A stretch of DNA of 64,000 nucleotides from Selaginella moellendorffii (Eukaryota; Plantae; Lycopodiophyta), in the NCBI RefSeq assembly GCF_000143415.4, contig NW_003314348.1, forward strand, positions 686,062 to 750,061. The letters run 5' to 3'. The position numbers and the translations under genes are program-made. Numbering within the stretch: the stretch's first letter is position 1; each line of letters starts with the position of its first letter. Below the pieces are notes generated by a model. That model saw only the letters and a program-made list of their open reading frames with translations. It ran no database searches and was not told where the DNA came from. This document shows, piece after piece, positions 1,680-53,247 of the stretch.

Positions 1680-2300
1680 GATATCAGGGTTATTAACATT
1701 GTTGATTGAATACTAAAAGGATTTTCTTAGCAGAGTGATTTTTCAACTAATGCAGCCAACTTGTTCAAACTCCTTGAGCTCAGCTTGGAAGCATGTTCAA
1801 TCCTCACCTCCACCACCTTAGTCAAAACATCAATAAGATCTAAAGTGCAAATTAATTTATCGAATCAAAGCTTATTGACATTGTTGATTGAATATTGAGT
1901 TGTAGTGGATCCAACATGTTCAATCCTCACCTCCACCACCTTACTCAAATTGTTCCTCACAAAGCCAACTCACCATTCAATTAGGAATGTCAATAAGCCC
2001 TGATTTGATAAATTAATTTGCAATTCTAACATGTTCAATCCCACCCACCAACTTAACATTTAATTAACAATGTCAATAAGCCCTAATTTAGTAAATTAAT
2101 TTGCAATCCCAACATGTTCAATCCTCACCTCCACCATCTTGCTTAAATTTTTCCTCACAACATCAGTAGGATCCATAGCCATTGCAACTCAAATTCAATT
2201 AGCAATATCAATAAGCCCTAATTTAGTACATTAATTTACAATCCCAACATATATAGTCCCACCTCCACCACCTTGTTCAAATCATTTTTCACAACAACAA
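1680..2300. repeat. Degenerate tandem/inverted repeat array, probably a decayed transposon
   Basis: Motif CATGTTCAATCCTCACCTCCACCACC recurs near 1793, 1915, 2030, 2113 and 2250 (last two degenerate). TGCAAATTAATTTATCGAATCAAAGCTTATTGACATT (about 1846-1882) recurs inverted as AATGTCAATAAGCCCTGATTTGATAAATTAATTTGCA (about 1986-2022). The region is AT-rich and CpG-poor. Confidence 0.6.
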
Positions 2301-5059
2301 TAGTCCATAGTCATTACAACAATGCTTTTGGAGGAACTTAGTTAAGTGTATCTCATGAGCCAATAAATTCTTCATCCTCAACAATGGTCTTTAAAATAAC
2401 TTTGGAGTTGTAAAATTCTCACCAATCAATTATACTATTAAACTAATCTTATGATTGGCAACAAGATTATTACTATGCCCCTCTCTTTCAAGGTAAATTG
2501 GCCTGTGTTAGTTTATCAAGTTGTCCCAATAATAGAGTGTGAACTTTGCAGTATTTGTTGAAATCTTTTTAACAACACTACTCACATGACATTAAGGCCT
2601 TTATACACTTCAATTCCTTTTCTCGATCCATCCATTAGTAACTAATTTTCTACCTTGTGAATTGCATAACTTCATTATTAGTTGAATTGTATTAGTTTCA
2701 CGACATTAACCAGGAACTACCCTTGAATGTCAACATAAATCCAAGCTTATCATTTTTGGGAGTTTCTATACAGGGATAGGGACATGCTTGTCCAAATGCT
2801 TTATGCCATGACTTTTCTTATTTTGAGAAGCTAGTGAAGATCTTGGAGGAACAACCACCTAATTTGAAGTTTGAGATAGTTACATTAGCTAAACCATGCA
2901 TTTATCAAAATTGTAATGAAATGGAGAGAACAAATAAACATTTTAAAGAAAAGAGTAAATGTAAAAACAAAAAAAAGGTTTAAGATTATAAAAATTATAA
3001 TAAAACTTAATTTATATCGACATAATTTTCTTAAATAGAATACAAAACAAACCATAGCATAGCAAATTGTTTCTAAACCCTATAAATCACTAAGCAAAAG
3101 ATAAAAGGAGGAGAATAACAATAAGGAGGGATAAATTAGGCCTCACCCCTTTCTTACAGTGATAATGTTTAAATGTTTACAGTGATAGTGTTATTGGAAA
3201 TTTCTTAGGAAAACAAGTGTTTGAGTGTGTGAACTCTAATTATAGTGAGGATTGGAGTGATCTCAATGTAACCCATAGTCAACTGTGGAAACACAATATT
3301 CCTAAACAATTCTTAATAAGGATCTAGTGCTTTGCACTCTCATTATTCATTAGATTCTCACCAAAGTTATTATATGGCAATATGTTATATAACATTTTGT
3401 GGTCTTGTTTTTGGGTAGAATTTCTATTAGGATTGAGATAGTTGGAGGTTGATTTCAAGCCCAATTTGTTCTTTTTCGCTTTTATTGGTCAAGAAATAGC
3501 TTTGTAGTGATTAATCCATGAGAGGAGTAGCTTTGCAGTGGTAGAAAGTATTCACTAAGGTGTATTGTCAAATGGGTTGCAGAGATCTTATCAAAAACAC
3601 ATCACAAACTCTGTTTGTGCCACACATTAGAAACATCCAATATTTCAATATCATTCATTCATTCAAATAGATGTTTATAAAATCACACCACATGCTCATA
3701 CAATTCATACTATAAGTTGTCAATGCACTCCAAGATAGGGAGGTTAGTAGTGATGAATATATACTAGAAAATATTAAAGGCAAAGTTGGTTTTTTTTTTA
3801 CATCCCACAAATAAAACTCTTGTCTTGAAGACCCTAATAACATTCCAACTTGCTCTCTATCACATTATGTTCAGAAGCATTGTCACTCTTAATACATTCA
3901 GACTGTATATGTGTTGAAAATTGCATGGTGGTTGATAGCTTGCAAGTGACTATGCCCCACATATCAAAGTGTGAATGTAGAATCTATATGATACAAACTT
4001 GCAATATGCTACCACATAAAATGTTTAAGTCTTCATAATTACAATGAAATTTACTCATAGTTCATATGCCATAACTCACATTAGTGTAAATCTGTCTTCA
4101 AATTTGAGATAGATGCCTCTATTATAGCTTTGCTAGATCATGCATTGCTAATGCTTTGTGAACTTACTGTTAGCTGAATTTATATTTTATTGTTTGATAA
4201 CTATATTGGAAGTTGATAATACCAGCACTATTTATAGCTATGTTAGTTCATACTTGACTGAATACCTCCTCTGTTGGTACTCTATTATATAGACCCTTCC
4301 AATGCATCTAGACTAGCAAATCCTCTAAAAGTCTTGAATGTTTGAGAAATTAAAAAATTACAGATATGAGTGTGAAATTTCTGATTACAGGCAAAACATT
4401 GTCCTCCACCACTTCTTCCATATTGTGAAACCACTTTCAGAAGCAGAGGACAAAATGTTATTTGCCTCCTCATGTAGTGTTTCACATAGCTATTTGAGTT
4501 TACTCATTGAATTGTACACTAGCAAATCCTCTTGTTTGCCTCTCTGAATGCTTGTCAACACCTTATCTCCATGTTTTTGGACTCAACAACATATGCTCAC
4601 CATATAGTGTGTGCCTTATGTAACCCAAGACCCATCCTAGCATCACGTCTGGCATGACAAAAACTTATGATTCATGGATACCATGAATGCATGTGGCATC
4701 CATGCATAGGTTCTATGACTCATGGTTTCTTATAAAGAGACGTCTGTGTATATATTTCTCTAACATCCAATTAGAAATTAACACAATTTGGTGCAATTTA
4801 CAAATTGCACTTCATATTTAGGAGTATTTTGATGAAAAATTTGGCATTGCCTGTTTGATGTAAGCATATACCCTTCCTTTGCTCTTGATATAATGCTATT
4901 ATCATGGTTAAAATACATGCTCTATCCTTGACAAAAGAAACTAAAGACATTTCCACTGGTGGTGAATATCCCAAGCTTCAGAAGTGAGTAGAATGTCCAA
5001 GAATGTCGGTAGAGTTGTCTGTGTGTCTAGGTTCTTACATTGAGCTTTTTTTTATGCAG

Positions 5060-43224: not shown

Positions 43225-44470
43225 TTTTACACTTAAAAGCTTCGATGTGAAAGACCTCCATCAGCGACTGCATCTTTCGCAGAGATGGCAAGCTTCGTGA
43301 CATTGTCCCTCCACATTTGGCCTGCTTCTCCCATCATATCCTTCACTGCCTTTTCAACGATCGTGGCATCTGGACTCGGTGGCAAGCGAGAGCCGATCTT
43401 CCAATGCTCCACAGCAAGCACACAGTTAAGTGGCTGCTCGTACAAGAAAGGCCATCTAATCACGGAGACTCCAAGCACGAACGATCGTCTCCAAAAAGAG
43501 AATTCCATCCACAATGAGTGAGAAACGCACCCACGGAACGATGCTTGAGAACCTGTGTGGACGACATATTAAGCAAGAAAAAGAGGTAAAAGAAGAAGCT
43601 TACCTTGAGCTGAGAAGCCCAGGAAACAAACTTGCATTTGTCATAACTTGGGTCTTAGAAAAGCTTTCGAAGCTCATTGTTGTCTGATCCTATCACCCAG
43701 GCTTCCAAAGGAGATGTAGATGACTGATTTGGACGGCTGCTCGTCCAACCAGTCGAGGCAGCTCATATCTTCCATCCAAAAACCACACCTCTCCTGCTCG
43801 AGTTCGTACACTCCAACCTGGCCGTCGAATGCAAATGACGGAAGCAATTGACCGATTGGAACAAACTGTGGAGTGTCTCTAGCAAGTTGGTCGAGCTGAG
43901 ATGTTTCCAACTCGTAGAAAGAGTTTATAAACACCAGTATACCGGAGAGTGAAGTTGGGATCTACAGCGTGAACTTCTTGAAGATGCAAAGGAAATTCCC
44001 GTCCAGAAATTGGAGGGAGGCCGGGTACGAAATCTATGATCCTCGAAGGAATAATAAAAACTCAGAGGAATAGATTAAATTACCTTTTAGCGACAGGAGT
44101 CCATTTTCCTTGAGCACAAGAAGACCATTCTGGATGCTAAGCCACGAAGCAGAAAATGTTGAAAGAGTCACCTTGCAAATCAGGAACTGGCGAGCGACGC
44201 CTTGAAGGCTAGTAATTGCCAAGTCGATGCACTCTAGGCAGAGAATCATCTACCATGATATCTCAAATAATCTTGGGCACCGCCAGTTTGAGATTCTTCT
44301 CCAAGATAGCAGCAAACTGGAGTGGAACCGTAGTGACGGAGAAGGCTTCTGGAATGAAGGCATCCTGTAAGTCGACAAATCTCAAGTGCTGACTAGTAGC
44401 TTGTTGCTCAGTAGCTATAAAAGTCTCCCTTTTGTTTGAGATTAAGAAAGTGATGATGAAAAAATCCATA
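43225..44470 (-). pseudogene. UGT pseudogene (copy 5)
   Basis: Frameshifted UGT pieces (NKRETFIATEQQ, FINSFYELETSQL, HWKIGSRLPPSPD) with the start missing. Confidence 0.88.
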
Positions 44471-45122
44471 TAAAATCAAATTTATTCTCCTTTTCAATCT
44501 CAATTGCATTTTTTTCTTGCCATGTCATTGTCAATTAAAGAGTGTGTCATTCAAGACTACTTCCAATATTACCTTTTCATCTTCTAAGGGTAGAAGTATT
44601 AAGTAATATGCTAGTCTATCCATTCTTATATATAAGTAATAAACCCCAAGTAATATATCTATTATCATACCATTCCTATCTACTTTTGGTAAAAAAAATG
44701 GCAATGCAATGTAGTTTTCTTTTTAATAGTGTAATGCTTGCTATGCTTATAAGAGCAATGAAGTTTAGGACTTGAAATTTTCTATCACAATTTTCAAGTA
44801 TATATGAAAAATCTAGCAAGAGCTTAGAGATTATGTTAAGGGATAAGACTCTAGTAGGAAATTATATGGTAGTTCTAATAGTTAGACTGCTTTTCTTACT
44901 TGCACGATACATCTATTGGTTATTATTTAATTAGCAACTTGAAGAACAAATAGTCTTATTTAATTAGCAACTTGAAGAACAAATAGTCTAGCCTTTCTTT
45001 CTAACATATTATTGTCTATTAATACATGAGTTTTTATTTTTCCAGTTGAGTTGGGATCCCTACTAGTAATAATAATATGGGAAGATAGATTTTGTAAAAG
45101 ATGGAGAAAAGATTAAAATCTT

Positions 45123-45560
45123 CATAGATATGGGTTCAAAGAAAAACTAATATAATCTTTATCTACTTTATGAAATCTACTAATATATGCTCAATTTTAC
45201 TAATTACACCCAAAAACATTTGTTGTAAACTACCCCCACCTTTAAAGCTAACACCTTGAATGAAAGTTATTATTATTAACAAAAATATTCTTATATTCAA
45301 GATGTGTGGTTTTTGAATCATATTTGTTTTTATTAAATTTATTATTTAGTGTTTCAAATAATAACATTTCAACATATATTTATATCTTTTTCCCAATCCA
45401 CTTAAACGTTTTTTATTAGTAACTAAAGAGAAATTCAGACAAATATATTCATACTTTGTTCATATGTAAGTTAAATATATATTTGGATGAGCTTACTCAT
45501 ATAATTTGAAATTTATGTGATACAGCTTTAGTCTAGTTAAATTAATTTATTTTTGCCTTA
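45123..45560 (-). pseudogene. Decayed tandem paralog of the AT-rich secreted-protein gene
   Basis: Minus-strand remnants in the same order as 45789-46245: ETLNNKFNKNKYDSKT, QGVSFKGGGS, N*AYISRFHKVDKDYISF and LNPYL. Stops and frameshifts are present. Confidence 0.7.
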
Positions 45561-45788
45561 TAAGTAAATATAAGGCAAAAAATGTATGTGCTTAGGATAA
45601 AACTTTTACTGTAAATTTATTTTTCTTTTGATTTATTTTAACTCATTTAAAAATAAATTTGACTACTTACTTTATAAACTTATAATGGAAAGTGCATTAT
45701 CAGTTAAGGTTTTCTAAAACAAATTAAAAATTATAATTATGTATTTGACACTAGAACTCACTAGTTTTATTTTTAAAGTAGACTATTA

Positions 45789-46245
45789 TTATTTCCATGG
45801 ATATGGATTTAAATCTAGATTATCAAAAATAATATACCCATTATTTATTCTATGTGTTCTACCAGTATATGCCCAATTTTGCCAACCATACCATGAACCT
45901 TTTGTTATAAATTCTCCTTCACCTCTGAATATTACACCTTGAAATTTAATAGAGTTAATTAAAATATCTTGACATTCTTGGTACGTTTTTCTATCATAAT
46001 ATTTTTTATCAAATTGATCATTTAATGTTTCTCTCCAAATAATAGAATTTCCATATAAATTACAGCTATTTAAAGCATTTAGCATATCTGGTTTCCAATT
46101 AACTAAAAACAAAATTACTACAAATGAAAAAAAAATCAAATATATACATACTTGGTTTACTTGTTAAGTTGAATAAATTTGCTGATGAGCTTACTAATAT
46201 AATTTTAATTAAAAGAATAAAAATAATTACTAATTTAGTTGCCAT
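45789..46245 (-). CDS. Small secreted protein of unknown function in an AT-rich island (2 exons, about 135 aa)
   Basis: Exon 1 (46245-46152) is signal-peptide-like: MATKLVIIFILLIKIILVSSSA. A 49-nt GT-AG intron (46151-46103) joins it in frame to ORF 45789-46139, ending FRGEGEFITKGSWYGWQNWAYTGRTHRINNGYIIFDNLDLNPYPWK. Confidence 0.7.
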
Positions 46246-46457: not shown

Positions 46458-49400
46458 TCACGAGCTTGCTGTTGGTTTTCCAACGCTGTGCTCCATTTTC
46501 ACCCTTAATGCCTTCCTCCTCGCTAGAAAACCTCTTGCTGCTGCTTGTATTCTCGTGGCTGCGGTGACGCGTGATGGCTCCTCGTGCTGCTCGACTTGCT
46601 GTATGGTTCGTTTTGCTACAAATCTCGCAGCTCGTTGTATCTTTGTTGCTGCGATGTGGTTTTGCCACGGTGTTGCTTGAATTCGTATGCCCGAAGCACC
46701 GTAGTCTGCATGTTTTTGCTCCTGTCGAACTTGTAGTCTCAGTAAATATCTCCTCGTAGCTACTTGTATCTTTCTGGCCGCGATAACTTCCAGTTCTTGT
46801 GCCTTGTGAGCCTGTTCTTGTTCGTGTTTTTGCCTCGCTGCTTTCTTTCTTGCCAGAAACCCCCTTGCGACTGCCTGAATTTTAGTGGCCGCCTCAACTT
46901 CTTCTAGCTTTTCCATTCCTCCAGTGGCTGCTCTCTCCTTGGCCAGCTTTCCCCTTACAAACGCTTGAATCTTTTTGGCAGCGGTTTCTTCTCGCTCGTG
47001 CTTCTGGAAGCTACCCCGACTGGCTTTTGCTGCTTTCCTCCTCGCTATAAACCCCCTCGCAAGGGCTTGCATTTTAGTGGCTGCCTGAGCTTCTTTTGAG
47101 TTCTGTTGCTCTTGCTCCTGGTTTTGGCCTTCACTGCCTCTGGCAAATCTCCTCCTCACCAAAAATCCCCTCACAAGAGCTTCGATTTTCGTGGCGGCAC
47201 CACGTATGTAAACGCTTTGGATTTGCTTCTCTCTCTCAATTCGTAGTGTAAGAGGTAGACCCTGCGATCAGAGCACACAACACTCTTTGAGAGAGATTGA
47301 GAGGAAGATAAGAACATAAAACTCTCAACTGTTGGTCCGATCTTGTACAACGTGAACGTTTCCAGAAGCTGCTTGAATGGAATTCCTTTGTTTGGAACTC
47401 GAAAGCTCATAACCTCAAACTCAATCCTCAAGTACCTGGACGAGAAGCGGCAAAATAAATGAAAGCCTCTGATTGGCCAGCTTACCATTGCACGGTGGAG
47501 TTGTGTCGTCGTCCCAGAGGAACACCCAGAGCGTTCACAAAGTTTCGAAGTTTGTGCATTCCAATGTATCCCGAAGCTCTGCATTTTAGAAAAAAGATAA
47601 AATGAGAAAGGTTAAAGACCACATTTCTTACTCTGGATCGAAGGGCTGCTGAGCCCATAGCGCTTTAAATGCAAGCAGGTGTTCAGGCGAGACCATAGAA
47701 TTCTCGTTAACCAGCCCGAAAGTGATGGCATCCAGGATCAAGGCTACGAACAAGTTCATGAATATGAAACTCGATATCACCACTAGGCATACGAAATAGA
47801 TGACTCCAGCAAACGGATGACCACAGTCATTCCTCGCTAAAGAGTCTCCCTTTGTACACTTTGGCGAGTCCACCATCACGTCGACCATGATGCAAGACCA
47901 GTTGTCAAGCGTAGAAACCTGCAGCATAAGCTCTGATTAGAACACAAGCAACTGTATCGAAGCTTACTTGGAAGACGGTAATGAAGGAGTTGACGAACGT
48001 TCGAAAGTTAAGCGTGGGACCAATACAGGTTCCTTCTGCGACATGACTAAACATCTGGAAGCCAATACCAGAGAACGCGAACAGGAAGACACCGAGAAGA
48101 ACCATGATCTCTCCCATAGTCGGCAGGCATATGACCATAGTTCTCATGATCACCCGTGCTCTCGGTACATGAGGAATGATGCAGAAAACTCGAGCAATGT
48201 AAGCAAATCGACAAACATAGCCTCTAGGCGTTCCTTTCTTTCCCATCAAGCCTGAAGCTGCCAATATAGATATTGCTGCTTCCATGTGTTTGGAGTGCTC
48301 GTATTTGTAAACTTCGAACTGCAAACACACACTTGAAACTCAAGCATTTATCTAAGAACGCACAGACCTCATCACCAAGAAATTTGATCAAGGACTCCAA
48401 TAAAAAATACGTTGTAAGAGCAACGTGAGCTTTCTGGCGGCGCATAGAAACATAAGCCGGCTGGCCAGCGTAGTTCGTTGACAAGAGTGCAGCGTATCCC
48501 AGCAGGCATATTATCATACTGTTTTGGTAGTGACGATTGCGGATAGCGTAAAAACATAGCTGCCGGACGTAATTCTTCGGTGGCCTCGGTAGCTTTGACG
48601 GTTCCAGCTTCTGGATGATGCGATTCATGTCTCGCCAGAGCTTCTGTCTCTCCGTTAGGAGCTTGGAGCCCGAGTTCTTCCCAAACTCGTTGATAAAAAC
48701 TCCAATAAACACCCGGACTATGAAAAATCCTCCACATATGCAAAACGCCACGAAGAAAATGGCATAAGCCGGACTGTTGTCCCGTTGCGGCTGCTTGTTT
48801 TCGCCAACGATATCCATCACGGGGTATAGCCAGTTTGTAACCCAGTTGTCGAAAGTCGAGCAAACGAATAAAGAGAGGAAGGCATTACCAATGCTGTCAA
48901 AGTGGAAAGTAGGATTTGTCCAGGCCCGTGGAACATATATTCCGATGTTGTTGTAGTAATGGCCAGTGCAATAAGCTCGATGAGTAATAGTAGCATCGTT
49001 GCACGAGTAAAGAAGGCCCCTGAATAACTGGACACCGATAGAGCCAAAAACCACGAAGATGAGGAACGTAAACAACAGAACGGCCACTATAGCTGGAACA
49101 GTCTTGACGAGATTCGACATCAAGCTTTTGAGTTCGCCAAAGCGACAGATGAACCGAAATGGTCGCAGTGCCGTCAATGCATGTATAGCTCGTCGAGAGT
49201 TCTCGCTCCAAGTAGCAAGATTGAGTGCGTCGATGATCAGAAGAGAAAGTTCCAGGATGTTGTAGGGGTCGTTAAAGACTGCACTGGGCGAAGATACGAA
49301 GCCTTGAACAAAAACTCTGAGAGAAAACTCCAGGAGGAAGACCTGCGAAAGACCCGTGTGTAATGTGAAGTTCACAAACACGGAGAGAAACATACTAACC

Positions 49401-52400
49401 ACGAACACAAGCTTGTGGAGAACTTTGATAGCCGTGTCGGCAAATACCGGCTCTCCAGTGGCTCGCATCTCAATAACAAGCCAAGTGCTTATAGCGACCC
49501 AAGCGATTGAGAACCAGCGCCACCATCTGCTGTTTAAAACCATCTTGCAAAATCCTGTCGCACGACCCTCTTCTCCAAGAAAAGATCTTTGCCTCTCGAG
49601 AGTGGGAAAGCTTTCCTCAAGTGCCTCGTAGTCTGAAAGTTGGAAGGACTCCTTTTTCCGGCGTCTGTCTAGATTTCTAGCTAGCTTGCTAGATACCTTG
49701 AAAGGAGGCCTGGTGATGTCAGCAAGCGTAAGAACAGCATCCTGAAGCGCAGTTCGCGAACCTCTTTTCTCACCAATGTCTGCTGGAAATCCAGAAGCCT
49801 GGAGAATCTGTGAACCACGACTGATCCTTTGCGGCCTTTCTGTTTCTGTAATGTTCTCTCCCACAGCTGCAGTCGACACTGCCTCCGAGCCATCTCTAGC
49901 ACTCTCTGCTGGCTCAGAAGCTGCTCCTGGAAGCAAACTCGTGTTGTCATATCCCAGTTCCAGGTTTCCGTCAATCTGTCTGCCCCGTCGAGAATGAAAG
50001 CCTGCTTTCACTCGCTCAAAAGCGTTCATCACCCAGCTACCTCTTCCCGTAGAGGCCCGATTTTGCATGCGCTTGAACATTCTCATGTGCTCGGTCTGCA
50101 GGAGAAAAGTTGTGGAGAGAGAAAACAAGGTTTGGAAAATGCACGAACCCGCTGTATTTTCTTTTTCTCGTTGTCTGTAAGCTCGTTATGCTCTAGTATA
50201 ACAGCAATGATAAGGTTCATAATGATATGGACTGTGAGGACGAAGTAAAATATATACAGAAAAGGCGCCACACCACTGCACGTAACAACGATGAAAACGA
50301 TTTGTCAAGAAAGATAGATGTAGCTTACTTATACTCCACCCCGGGCCTCATGGAGTTCCACATTTGATTTGGCCAGGATTCAGCAGTAGTTACCGAGAAC
50401 CAAAGAAGCATAGTCTGGAGCATATTATCGTGGTGTCCGCGAGGGTACCCGTCCGTGAACTTATAGTATTGACCACTGTATAACTCCATGCTCACGATAG
50501 AAAATATAACGATAACTAGCAGGTAAAAGAAGAACACACCCACCAGTGAGCCAACACTTTTGATGCACGTGGCCTGTAAAAAGTAGATTAGCTGATATAT
50601 TACCTTCGAAGAAAGAAGGCTGACCACAACTGAAGAATGTTTGTCGACATGTTTCTTGGACAAGTAGAACCACCGCATGATTCGAACTGCGGAGATATTT
50701 GGATACGCCCGTGAGATTAGTGCTCCAGAAGATACCGCGATTACGAAGAGATCAAACAGGTTCATCCCTGCAAAACTATTCACAGCTCAGATTTGAGGAA
50801 CTGAAACTTTCGCTTACTGTCAGCCATAAATGAAATTGGTCCGTAAGCAAGAAAACGCAATAGTAATTCTGCTGCAAACAAAACAAGGAGCACCGCTTGA
50901 ATACCATCTGTGCACTGACGTTAAGGTGTACGGTCACAAGGAAAAGACGAGGCTGATGGATACAAAGTGTGTACAAGAACTCCTTAGACATGCCGTATCT
51001 GTACAAACATAAGATAATCGCGTTAACAGTAACAGCCAGTAGTACACCGCGATCAAAACTTGGATGCTGAACAACTGCGCGGCATTTCTCGGATACTGAT
51101 AAGGCTGCTCTGCCACCTCTTCCACTTAATGAACGTTGATAAGTTCTTGAGCCCAATCGGCTGAATCTCATGGAGCTAGTGTGAAAGGTATCTCGAAAAG
51201 TCGAGTGAGTGCGGCTAAAAATTCGGCCGACACTTCTTTTAATTCTCCTGGATCTGTTTAGAAATCGCAAATGCCATTTCAAATGACGATCATCAGTTAT
51301 AATGTCGTCCCGGAGGATGTTCGCCATCACGGTTGCGCTATAAAAGGAGGTCGTGCTTTTACGAGATTTTTTCAAGAGTGCCTAAGAATATTGAATCCCG
51401 CTTAGTGTTTCCAGTGATAAAACCGTCACGTACCTGATGTTCCGCCCTGACTCGAAGAAAAACTCCACTTATCCCAGCAATAAACACATTGCAAAGAAAA
51501 TATGTCCCAATAATCACCAAAGTCATGAAGTATGAATCTGTAAAGCAGTGTCAGGCAGAATTGACCTCGCCAAAGTAAATCTAATACTTGCTCGTTCTCC
51601 TTCAGCATCCTTTACGCGGTACATTATCAGAGACCATCCTTCCAGCGATACAATCTGGAAAAGAGCTACAACATAAAGCACAAGGTGAAAGGCAACGAAC
51701 CTGAAACATACTGATCAAAGAATACCAGAGGTAATCAAAACTCGTTTGTCCATAGTTAGGATTTCCATACTTCTGCAAATGCAAAGTTGTATGATGAAAA
51801 CTGCGAACGGCGGAACTTTACCAAGCATTTCTGAGTCGAGGGACAACTGTATCCATCGACTACTTTCTTATCACAAAAACGTTCTGGATATGATAGTTGC
51901 TTGTCCTGACTTCGCAAGCACCTAACAGAAATGGGAAGTTCAGCTTAGTGGTGCAATATGCAAAATTTAATTGAGTACCTTTGAGACAATGTCTTTTGCA
52001 AAAACTGTGTCCCGAGCAGCGCATAGAAGACCAACATGAAAAATGTGAGGAGGATAACATTTTGAAGCGGACGGACACTTCTTTCGACTGCTACCATAAT
52101 AGCCTGCACAGCATAGCAGTTTCAGTTCAAAGCTAGAAAAGAAAAGAAAAACATACAATGACATCTGCAAAAAAATGGATGTGCTTCAAAGCTAGAAGGC
52201 CTCGAAATGCACGCAAGACCGCCAAACGTGCAAAATAATCTCTTCCAGTTATGCTTCTAACGATAATGTGTACCCTGTAGCATAGAGATTATGATACGCT
52301 CATGAAGCTAGGAATCTTACCAGGAATCAATAACAATGGCAAAATCAAGCCTGTTATAAGGGTTTCGAAGGTAAGAGTAAGGTCCCTTGCAGAACCCCAG

Positions 52401-53247
52401 ACAGAGGATCTTCAGTAACATTTCGATCCTGTTAAGAAAGCTTTAACGATGAGACAGTTCCATGTAACTTGCAAAAGAAAAACTTACGCATAAAGCGTGG
52501 TAATGACCCCATCCAGAAAGTCCAGCTTAAAATCCCTTACATCGGTCCATCGTTGTTCCCGGCTCCCAGCTTTTACTTGGAAAATCAGCACTAAAAGGTG
52601 AGATAGGATGAGGAATAGCAGCATATATTCCGCTGTCCTGGAAACAAATGTAGCACAAGGTTGTCATAGCTGGATCAGCAAATACAAGGTAGTTTGTTTA
52701 CTTGCATACTGGTTATGGATAAGCACGAAGAGCTTTAGACGCGTTGCGCTGTATTGACTCCAAAACCCAAGGGCACGACCCTCGATTCGAGCTCCAGTTC
52801 CTACAGCGCTACGCATTGCCTTCCTTCTCAGCAGCTGATAAAAGAAAGAAAAATCTTAAGCCGAGAAGAAGAAAGGAAATGTGTAGCGCTTACCAGCATA
52901 TGCCTGACTGCTTTATAAGCTCTTTTCCAATTTTCCATGGGCATGGAAGAGACTGGCGGGCGTGGAAGAATTTCCAGAGCAGCAATCAACGCGACAGTAG
53001 AAGGCTTTTGCCCATCGTCTGGTTTGTTCACGCCATGGATAGGAGGGAGCTGATCCTCCCATCGAGGATTCCGAGCTAGGAAATCTGGATCATCCTCTGG
53101 ATCTCTTTCGCTGCGCAGCAAATTCCAAAATCTAGACAAGATTTCCATACGAAAGACCGGCGCTTACTTCTGCATGAGCTGAGAGATAGTCTTGGAAGCC
53201 ACCTCGAGCATCCGAGAGAGCCTCGCGCTCTTGCGCGTCTCCTCCAT
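46458..53247 (-). CDS. Four-domain voltage-gated Ca2+ channel alpha-1-like protein with a multi-IQ C-terminus
   Basis: Four 6-TM repeats with pore loops VSLEGW, TTAESW, STFDNW and STLDNW. Other motifs: FHFDSIGNAFLSLF, FIFMNLFVALILD and HLLAFKALWAQQPFDPE. The IQ exon is joined in phase (KIGPT|GLPLTLR). Confidence 0.9.

What the first reader, a model, noticed from the sequence alone, without database searches (positions are those of the whole stretch)
46458..53247. Land-plant four-domain Ca2+ channel with an EEDD selectivity filter
Seen: pore-loop residues are E (VSLEGW), E (TTAESW), D (STFDNW) and D (STLDNW). Known: EEDD is the ring of animal T-type Cav3 channels, and four-domain Cav-like channels occur in green algae but are absent from angiosperms. 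Inference: a retained Ca2+-selective channel, plausibly linked to flagellated sperm.
Basis: partly seen in the sequence, partly recalled or inferred. Interest (0 to 1): 0.7.

Follow-up and report, generated by a model that had tools for sequence, protein, structure and literature searches.

The report
Spikemoss four-domain EEDD cation channel gene
This spikemoss gene encodes an intact, transcribed relative of animal calcium and sodium channels, a type that reviews say land plants lack; I found plant relatives only in lineages that still make swimming sperm, but the gene is already in RefSeq and its ion selectivity and sperm role are untested.

Summary
Window 46458-53247 (minus strand) is a 23-exon, all GT-AG gene. 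Its 1866-aa product equals RefSeq XP_024517810.1 of Selaginella moellendorffii, which has four Ion_trans repeats and a tail of IQ motifs.

The pore residues E370, E704, D1160 and D1442 fall in the same alignment columns as Cav3 EEDD, Cav1 EEEE and Cch1 NEEE.

It is not an orthologue of animal T-type channels. Land-plant homologues form one clade (100/100) that mirrors the species tree. They come from liverworts, mosses, lycophytes, ferns and Ginkgo; no angiosperm or conifer appeared. Their sister group is a green-algal clade with an EEDE filter. Four papers (2018-2024) say embryophytes lack such channels.

Caveats:
- The Asp next to the domain II filter residue, which calcium-selective Cav channels carry, is Ser here, so calcium selectivity is not assured.
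- The S4 segments keep about half the usual charges.
- The main RNA contigs of four studies use an exon-3 donor 8 nt downstream. This shifts the frame and gives RefSeq isoform X2.
- Codon statistics still show purifying selection on all parts.
- The sperm link rests on distribution only.

The scan has flagged two paralogous loci of this genome before (s1-355612, s1-380501).

The parts
46458..53247 (-). Coding span of the channel gene: 23 exons, 5601 coding bases, 1866 aa. Exons (high to low): 53247-53168, 53110-52894, 52834-52710, 52637-52488, 52428-52321, 52274-52157, 52103-51979, 51921-51822, 51772-51701, 51654-51588, 51537-51434, 51381-50964, 50907-50818, 50767-50625, 50573-50329, 50275-50149, 50095-49400, 49342-48368, 48318-47968, 47918-47632, 47578-47486, 47435-47330, 47261-46458.
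   Evidence: The phase check gives one open frame with all introns GT..AG. Spliced RNA contigs from four studies show 15 of the introns, and loose ends support introns 1, 13 and 14; four introns (51922-51978, 51773-51821, 51655-51700, 51538-51587) rest on GT..AG ends, reading frame and the exact P0212 match, with the contig length arithmetic fitting their summed exon lengths. Every exon peptide is found exactly, in order, in RefSeq XP_024517810.1 (P0212).
52710..53247 (-). Exons 1-3: cytoplasmic N-terminus, aa 1-140.
   Evidence: Conserved with paralogues (41% to P0002, about 71% to the L001 locus). dN/dS against the L001 paralogue is 0.19.
52700..52709 (-). Two competing 5' splice sites of intron 3. 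The productive donor GT is at 52709-52708 (72-nt intron, isoform X1). The alternative donor GT is at 52701-52700 (64-nt intron, frameshift, stop after 15 codons, RefSeq isoform X2 starting at Met145).
   Evidence: The joint 52636/52701 is in the main contig of all four runs, and the contig length arithmetic (978 nt) fits the 64-nt intron. The productive donor is homologous to CA|GTACGT of the paralogue. X1 and X2 are both in RefSeq. Both haplotypes carry both donors.
51455..52627 (-). Domain I, S1 to S6 (aa 145-415).
   Evidence: Pfam Ion_trans; marker positions. The exon with the pore loop is 100% identical in the paralogue. There are no amino-acid differences between haplotypes in this domain.
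51640..51642 (-). Domain I filter codon, E370 (SLEGW).
50191..51048 (-). Domain II, S1 to S6 (aa 534-749).
   Evidence: Pfam Ion_trans.
50379..50381 (-). Domain II filter codon, E704 (TAESW). The next residue is Ser, where Cav1, Cav2 and Cav3 have Asp.
   Evidence: PMC10120453.
49517..50190 (-). II-III cytoplasmic linker, the least conserved part.
   Evidence: 52% identity and dN/dS 0.22 against the paralogue.
48683..49516 (-). Domain III, S1 to S6 (aa 957-1215), split by the 57-nt in-frame intron 49343-49399.
48848..48850 (-). Domain III filter codon, D1160 (TFDNW).
   Evidence: Aligned with the E of STFEGW in Cav1.2.
47724..48523 (-). Domain IV, S1 to S6 (aa 1269-1502).
47904..47906 (-). Domain IV filter codon, D1442 (TLDNW).
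47187..47723 (-). Proximal C-terminal domain (aa 1503-1624), homologous to the post-S6 region of Nav and Cav.
   Evidence: PDB matches to Nav1.5 and Nav1.7 run to query residue 1612-1613. Exon 22 is 97% identical in the paralogue.
46518..47186 (-). Tandem IQ array: one degenerate motif (IEALVRGFLVR, aa 1625) at the place of the single Cav/Nav IQ, then six consensus IQxxxRxxxx[R/K] motifs at aa 1663, 1697, 1727, 1764, 1807 and 1837.
   Evidence: Pfam IQ, E 4e-18 on the exon and 3e-14 on the protein; motif scan.

Best explanation
Shown: this is a real, intact, transcribed nuclear gene of Selaginella moellendorffii. It encodes a pseudo-tetrameric four-domain (4 x 6TM) cation channel of the Cav/Nav/NALCN superfamily. 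Its pore ring is E-E-D-D, one acidic residue from each domain. The gene was inherited vertically within the green lineage. Land-plant copies form one clade that follows the species tree, and their sister group is a chlorophyte-type clade with an EEDE filter.

Inferred mechanism:
- The four acidic side chains form a high-field-strength divalent cation site, so the channel should pass Ca2+.
- It lacks the Asp next to the domain II filter residue, so it probably also passes monovalent cations. It is likely less Ca2+-selective than animal Cav channels.
- The S4 helices keep about 3, 2-3, 4 and 2 in-register basic residues. Gating is probably still voltage-influenced, mainly through domains I and III, but weaker or atypical.
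- The C-terminal array of one degenerate and six consensus IQ motifs should bind calmodulin-type proteins and give Ca2+ feedback. An annotated isoform (X3) removes it.
- An alternative exon-3 donor switches between the full-length product (X1) and a frameshifted transcript (X2).

Inferred biological role, from distribution only: Ca2+ entry in flagellated sperm.
For: - Gene model and frame. Spliced RNA contigs from four studies with GT..AG introns.
- Exact identity of all exon peptides with RefSeq XP_024517810.1.
- Four Ion_trans domains plus IQ.
- PDB similarity over the full length: Cav2.2 344 bits, Nav1.5 333, Cav1.2 331, Cav3.2 293, NALCN 237.
- Filter columns shared with Cav3, Cav1 and Cch1.
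- IQ-TREE on domains III-IV (58 rows, 555 columns): land plants 100/100, (liverworts + mosses) versus (Ginkgo, ferns, lycophytes); sister clade containing Chloropicon 100/100; Cav1 and Cav3 elsewhere.
- Purifying selection: dN/dS 0.07-0.22 against the paralogue in every region, including the N-terminus.
- Between the two haplotypes: pN/pS 0.23, no frameshift, and no amino-acid change in domain I.
- Homologues in Marchantia, Riccia, Sphagnum, Ceratodon, Diphasiastrum, Ceratopteris, Adiantum and Ginkgo, and none from angiosperms or conifers.
Against: - No electrophysiology exists, so selectivity and gating are inferred from sequence only.
- The neighbour of the domain II filter residue is Ser, not Asp (PMC10120453).
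- S4 charges are reduced in all domains, and only two remain in domain IV.
- The main assembled transcript in four studies is the frameshifted form.
- Transcript contigs occur in RNA-like runs of nine studies, probably mostly sporophyte tissue. This does not fit strictly sperm-specific expression.
- Absence from seed plants other than Ginkgo rests on capped protein searches, not on genome scans.
- Hornworts, cycads and streptophyte algae were not identified by name.
- Chlamydomonas CAV2, Nav, Cav2 and NALCN were not in the tree.
Confidence: 0.75

Rival explanations
1. The channel works mainly in vegetative or sporophyte cells, for example in electrical or Ca2+ signalling or in tip growth. Its loss in most seed plants would then be unrelated to the loss of flagella.
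For: Contigs of the transcript are in 19 RNA-like runs from nine studies of this organism, at depths typical of a moderately expressed gene. Selaginella has five paralogous loci, more than one sperm-specific job would seem to need.
Against: The tissues of the runs are hidden. The main form in those runs is the frameshifted isoform. That would fit unproductive splicing outside the cells where the protein is needed. The distribution matches flagellate plants, including Ginkgo.
Confidence: 0.3
2. It is a weakly voltage-dependent, poorly selective cation leak or modulatory channel. It would resemble NALCN or Cch1 in function rather than acting as a fast voltage-gated Ca2+ channel.
For: In-register S4 charges are about 3, 2-3, 4 and 2, against 5, 5, 5-6 and 4-5 in Cav1.1. 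No Asp follows the filter residue in any domain (PMC10120453). No AID motif (GYxxWI) is present.
Against: The sequence is closer to Cav and Nav than to NALCN (344/333 versus 237 bits). It is separated from Cch1 on the tree. There is no Lys in the filter. Domain III keeps four charges plus a His.
Confidence: 0.25
3. This particular copy is on its way to becoming a pseudogene. It is mostly spliced into a frameshifted transcript and is covered by four paralogues.
For: The 64-nt intron form, which gives a stop after 15 codons, is the main contig in all four runs laid. RefSeq isoform X2 starts inside S1.
Against: The full ORF is intact in both haplotypes, with pN/pS 0.23 and only in-frame or intronic indels. 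dN/dS is 0.07 in domain I and 0.19 in the N-terminus against the paralogue. RefSeq also models the productive isoform X1.
Confidence: 0.05
4. The gene is contamination or a recent horizontal transfer from an alga or animal.
For: RefSeq's automatic names are animal ones ('muscle calcium channel subunit alpha-1', 'sodium channel protein type 3').
Against: It has 22 short GT-AG introns of 46-72 nt. It is present in both haplotypes of the assembly at 98.6% identity. It has paralogues in the same genome. The gene tree mirrors land-plant phylogeny.
Confidence: 0.01

Closest known systems
Animal T-type channels (Cav3)
   Same: Four-domain architecture; EEDD filter ring; DIV motif (T/S)xDNW, very like Cav3 STGDNW; no AID motif for a beta subunit.
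   Different: It does not group with Cav3 on the tree. PDB scores are lower than to Cav1, Cav2 and Nav (293 versus 331-344 bits). The neighbour of the domain II filter residue is Ser, not Asp. It has fewer S4 charges and a tandem IQ array.
Chlorophyte four-domain channels (Chloropicon primus 'voltage-gated calcium/sodium channel' and related metagenomic proteins; Chlamydomonas CAV2 is the studied example, from my own knowledge)
   Same: Sister clade, 100/100. Shared neutral residue at the third S4 position of domain I and the second of domain III. Asp in the domain III filter.
   Different: The algal filter is EEDE and the domain IV S4 keeps five charges. Land plants have EEDD and lose domain IV charges stepwise. 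CAV2 itself was not available to place on the tree.
High-voltage-activated Cav1/Cav2 and Nav1
   Same: Best sequence matches among solved structures, E 1e-101 to 1e-96. The homologous proximal C-terminal domain has an IQ-type motif at the same place.
   Different: Filter is not EEEE or DEKA. No AID and no IFM particle in the III-IV linker. Pfam GPHH and Ca_chan_IQ are not detected.
NALCN / fungal Cch1
   Same: Reduced S4 charge content.
   Different: No Lys or Asn in the filter. Lowest PDB scores (237 bits). The Cch1 rows, used here as the outgroup, form their own 100/100 group with no plant row among them; NALCN was not in the tree.
RefSeq models of this same gene: XP_024517810.1 (X1, 1866 aa), XP_024517811.1 (X2), XP_024517812.1 (X3), XP_002988341.2 (X4)
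   Same: X1 is identical to the exon model derived here.
   Different: The names are automatic animal names. I found no paper that discusses the gene.

Membership tests
Four-domain (4 x 6TM) voltage-gated-type cation channel superfamily (Cav/Nav/NALCN/Cch1) | Four homologous Ion_trans repeats in one polypeptide. | tested here: met
   Pfam PF00520, four stretches, E 5e-130. Domains lie at aa 145-415, 534-749, 957-1215 and 1269-1502.
Four-domain (4 x 6TM) voltage-gated-type cation channel superfamily (Cav/Nav/NALCN/Cch1) | Re-entrant pore loop in each domain, with the filter residue two positions before a conserved Trp. | tested here: met
   SLEGW, TAESW, TFDNW and TLDNW align with the Cav1, Cav3 and Cch1 filter columns.
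Four-domain (4 x 6TM) voltage-gated-type cation channel superfamily (Cav/Nav/NALCN/Cch1) | S4 helices with basic residues at every third position. | tested here: inconclusive
   The pattern is present but thinned: about 3, 2-3, 4 (+His) and 2 in-register charges, against 5, 5, 5-6 and 4-5 in Cav1.1.
Four-domain (4 x 6TM) voltage-gated-type cation channel superfamily (Cav/Nav/NALCN/Cch1) | Voltage-dependent cation current. | not testable with these tools
   Needs electrophysiology.
Animal Cav3 (T-type) | EEDD filter ring. | tested here: met
   E370, E704, D1160, D1442.
Animal Cav3 (T-type) | Asp next to the domain II filter residue (HFS+1). | tested here: not met
   Ser705 (TAESW). It is Ser in all land-plant sequences aligned. 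The criterion comes from PMC10120453.
Animal Cav3 (T-type) | Groups with Cav3 in a phylogeny. | tested here: not met
   Cav3 (100/100) is sister to Cav1, in a clade separate from the green clade.
Animal Cav1/Cav2 (HVA) | EEEE filter, AID motif in the I-II linker, and GPHH / Ca_chan_IQ domains. | tested here: not met
   Filter is EEDD. No GYxxWI motif. PF16905 and PF08763 are absent from the Pfam hits.
NALCN / Cch1 | Lys in the filter (EEKE or EKEE), or NEEE in Cch1; clade membership. | tested here: not met
   No Lys or Asn in the filter. Cch1 forms its own 100/100 group. NALCN has the lowest PDB score. NALCN itself was not in the tree.
Green-lineage (Viridiplantae) four-domain channel clade | Monophyly with chlorophyte channels, and an internal topology that follows the species tree. 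| tested here: met
   The clade of 29 rows has 100/100 support and land plants have 100/100, split as bryophytes versus vascular plants. Chlamydomonas CAV2 was not included.

The most novel reading that the evidence does not exclude
These channels are the flagellar Ca2+-entry channels of land-plant spermatozoids, a functional counterpart of Chlamydomonas CAV2 or animal CatSper. They would have been lost together with flagella in conifers, Gnetales and angiosperms. Their EEDD ring without the neighbouring Asp would be a selectivity type not yet characterised. Inclusion of the N-terminus and of the calmodulin-binding tail would be set by alternative splicing.
Probability: 0.35. Interest if true: 0.75.

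Novelty: new member of a known kind. Interest (0 to 1): 0.55.

Why it matters
Four papers from 2018 to 2024 (PMC5824947, PMC6259924, PMC6509283, PMC11085791) state that land plants have no four-domain Cav/Nav-type channels. Arguments about the loss of fast Na+/Ca2+ excitability in plants build on that statement.

The gene here and its relatives show that the loss is not a feature of land plants as a whole. Relatives occur in liverworts, mosses, lycophytes, ferns and Ginkgo. The loss appears confined to lineages without swimming sperm.

This gives a testable candidate for how plant sperm control their flagella by calcium. Only one Marchantia locus appeared in these searches, and Marchantia is genetically tractable. 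It also offers a natural EEDD pore without the neighbouring aspartate, which could test current rules of Ca2+ versus Na+ selectivity.

Tried and rejected
1. My first reading of intron 1 as 36 nt was wrong. RNA loose ends at 53110 place the acceptor at 53111/53110, giving a 57-nt intron.

2. A 30-nt intron in domain II was rejected. A loose end at 50574, a 17-residue gap in the paralogue alignment and RefSeq agree on a 51-nt intron, 50574-50624.

3. I first took the window for another Selaginella species, because the best representative (P0001) was only 64% identical. It is a paralogue. The gene's own product sat in a different cluster (P0172/P0212).

4. With the RNA-supported 64-nt intron 3, the frame breaks. 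Neither an assembly error nor an indel explains this, because the contigs match the DNA without indels. The explanation is an alternative donor.

5. A divergent contig matches only 52604-52630 and 52748-52767 (tables 5c and 7). I take it for a paralogue's transcript and did not resolve it.

6. MAFFT --auto on 177 full-length proteins timed out. FFT-NS-2 was used instead.

7. A search with the Ginkgo fragment returned only itself and Adiantum, so it says nothing about conifers or cycads.

8. Paper searches for the Marchantia gene ids, and for plant taxa together with channel terms, found nothing describing these genes.

9. No structure was predicted. Sequence evidence was decisive and the protein exceeds the size limit.

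10. On joining exons:
- Searches used single exons or ORFs by reference. After they used the stored RefSeq protein P0212.
- Scripts walked codons across exon borders by coordinate, for counting only.
Full report
**What is there.** ORF listing and Pfam scans of single ORFs on the minus strand of 46458-53247 gave Ion_trans in six pieces and IQ motifs in the last ORF. I built the exon model by reading the minus strand and checked it against RNA.

**RNA support.**
- One index search found 19 RNA-like runs from nine studies of one organism, each holding about 0.5-0.6 of the sampled words. That share fits a spliced transcript.
- Contigs of four runs from four studies, laid on 47141-53140, skip 15 intervals of 46-68 nt. 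All end CT..AC on the plus strand, which is GT..AG for a minus-strand gene.
- Loose ends fix intron 1 (53111-53167), intron 13 (50768-50817) and intron 14 (50574-50624).
- Four introns (51922-51978, 51773-51821, 51655-51700, 51538-51587) were among the joints not shown. They rest on GT..AG ends, the reading frame and the exact match to P0212, and the contig length arithmetic below fits their summed exon lengths.

**The frameshift at exon 3.** With the RNA-supported borders, the frame breaks between exons 3 and 4.
- The main contig of every run uses a donor at 52701, giving a 64-nt intron. Length arithmetic on one contig confirms it: 978 nt lie between two anchored pieces.
- That form stops 15 codons into exon 4.
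- A donor 8 nt upstream (CA|GTATGC, 52709) restores one open frame of 1866 codons, with 23 exons and all introns GT-AG.
- This donor is the homologue of the one used by a paralogue (CA|GTACGT).

**Identity.**
- The exhaustive protein search with the domain III ORF returned Selaginella moellendorffii, Ginkgo and Marchantia proteins at the top.
- A first tree put the window next to P0172. P0172 is RefSeq isoform X2 of this very gene, and it starts at Met145 inside S1. That is the longest ORF of the frameshifted transcript.
- Its cluster also holds isoform X1, XP_024517810.1 (P0212, 1866 aa, 'muscle calcium channel subunit alpha-1'). All 23 of my exon peptides occur in it exactly and in order.
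- So the window is S. moellendorffii and the gene is already modelled.
- Isoform X3 diverges after residue 1599 and lacks the IQ tail.

**Is it functional?**
- The second haplotype (L002) is 98.6% identical. Its indels are intronic or a 3-nt in-frame deletion. pS is 0.030 and pN 0.0070 (ratio 0.23). There is no amino-acid change in domain I.
- Against the paralogue at L001, dN/dS is 0.19 for the N-terminus, 0.07 for domain I, 0.13 for the I-II linker with domain II, 0.22 for the II-III linker, 0.07 for domains III-IV and 0.10 for the tail. Synonymous divergence is near saturation.
- The N-terminus and S1 are therefore under coding constraint, which only the productive isoform can explain.

**Family.**
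- Pfam finds Ion_trans four times (E 5e-130) and IQ.
- Against solved structures, the full protein scores 344 bits with Cav2.2, 333 with Nav1.5, 331 with Cav1.2, 293 with Cav3.2 and 237 with NALCN.
- E370, E704, D1160 and D1442 fall in the columns of Cav3 EEDD, Cav1 EEEE and Cch1 NEEE.

**Relatives and phylogeny.**
- Land-plant relatives found: five Selaginella loci, two in Diphasiastrum, Ceratopteris, Adiantum, Ginkgo, Marchantia, Riccia, Sphagnum and Ceratodon. Unnamed transcript fragments are closest to liverworts, mosses and ferns.
- No angiosperm or conifer appeared.
- IQ-TREE on domains III-IV (58 rows, 555 columns, LG+C20) gives land plants as one clade at 100/100. Inside it, (liverworts + mosses) stand against (Ginkgo, ferns, lycophytes).
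- The sister clade, also 100/100, holds Chloropicon and metagenomic proteins. Animal Cav1 and Cav3 lie elsewhere.
- The algal sister group has EEDE and land plants have EEDD (Ceratopteris EDDD). The resemblance to Cav3 is therefore parallel, not inherited.

**Mechanism, inferred.**
- The acidic ring predicts a Ca2+-binding pore.
- The residue after the domain II glutamate is Ser in all land plants, and the corresponding positions are Gly, Asn and Asn in the other domains. Spafford 2023 (PMC10120453) reports that an Asp there is ubiquitous in calcium-selective Cav1, Cav2 and Cav3, and that neutralising it makes Cav3 sodium-permeable. High Ca2+ selectivity is therefore not assured.
- S4 keeps roughly 3, 2-3, 4 (+His) and 2 in-register charges. 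The domain IV helix has five in Chloropicon, three to four in bryophytes and two here.
- There is no AID motif and no IFM particle in the III-IV linker.
- The tail has one degenerate and six consensus IQ motifs. Cav and Nav have one.

**Literature.** Four papers say embryophytes lack four-domain channels. I found none that describes the plant genes. Papers outside the held library cannot be excluded.

**Earlier scan notes.** Two paralogous loci of this genome were flagged before, with the same reading. I tested that reading independently here.

**Limits.**
- The tissues of the RNA runs are hidden.
- Contigs cannot give isoform ratios.
- Absence in seed plants rests on capped protein searches.
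- CAV2, Nav, Cav2 and NALCN were not in the tree.

Noticed in passing
L001:8062-14363 (S. moellendorffii GL377592.1): A paralogue of the channel gene is split in the annotation into a 174-aa model and a 1102-aa model (XP_024536113.1). Yet all exons matched (2 to 23; exon 1 was too short to match), including domain I, are present without stops. Its domain I pore exon is 100% identical in protein to the window's.
   Followed up: partly
window 47262-47329 and RefSeq isoform X3 (P0213): An alternative splice at the last intron gives a 1636-aa isoform that diverges after residue 1599 and lacks the whole IQ array. One run shows a variant joint 47279-47330.
   Followed up: partly
window 52604-52767: A lower-depth RNA contig in two runs matches only two short stretches here and diverges on both sides. 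It is probably the transcript of a paralogue cross-mapping on conserved exon 3/4 sequence.
   Followed up: no
window 44001-46000: A very AT-rich block (GC 0.29) lies just beyond the 3' end of the channel gene. Another AT-rich block is at 2001-4000 (GC 0.32). The scan already holds a first-reader note on 45789-46245.
   Followed up: no
P0212, P0255, P0256/P0001, P0174, P0002 (S. moellendorffii): Selaginella carries five paralogous loci of this channel, all arising within the lycophyte branch. Marchantia showed one locus and Diphasiastrum two.
   Followed up: partly
alignment, domain IV S4: Basic residues in the domain IV voltage sensor fall stepwise: five in Chloropicon, three to four in liverworts and moss, three in Diphasiastrum, two in this Selaginella gene.
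   Followed up: partly
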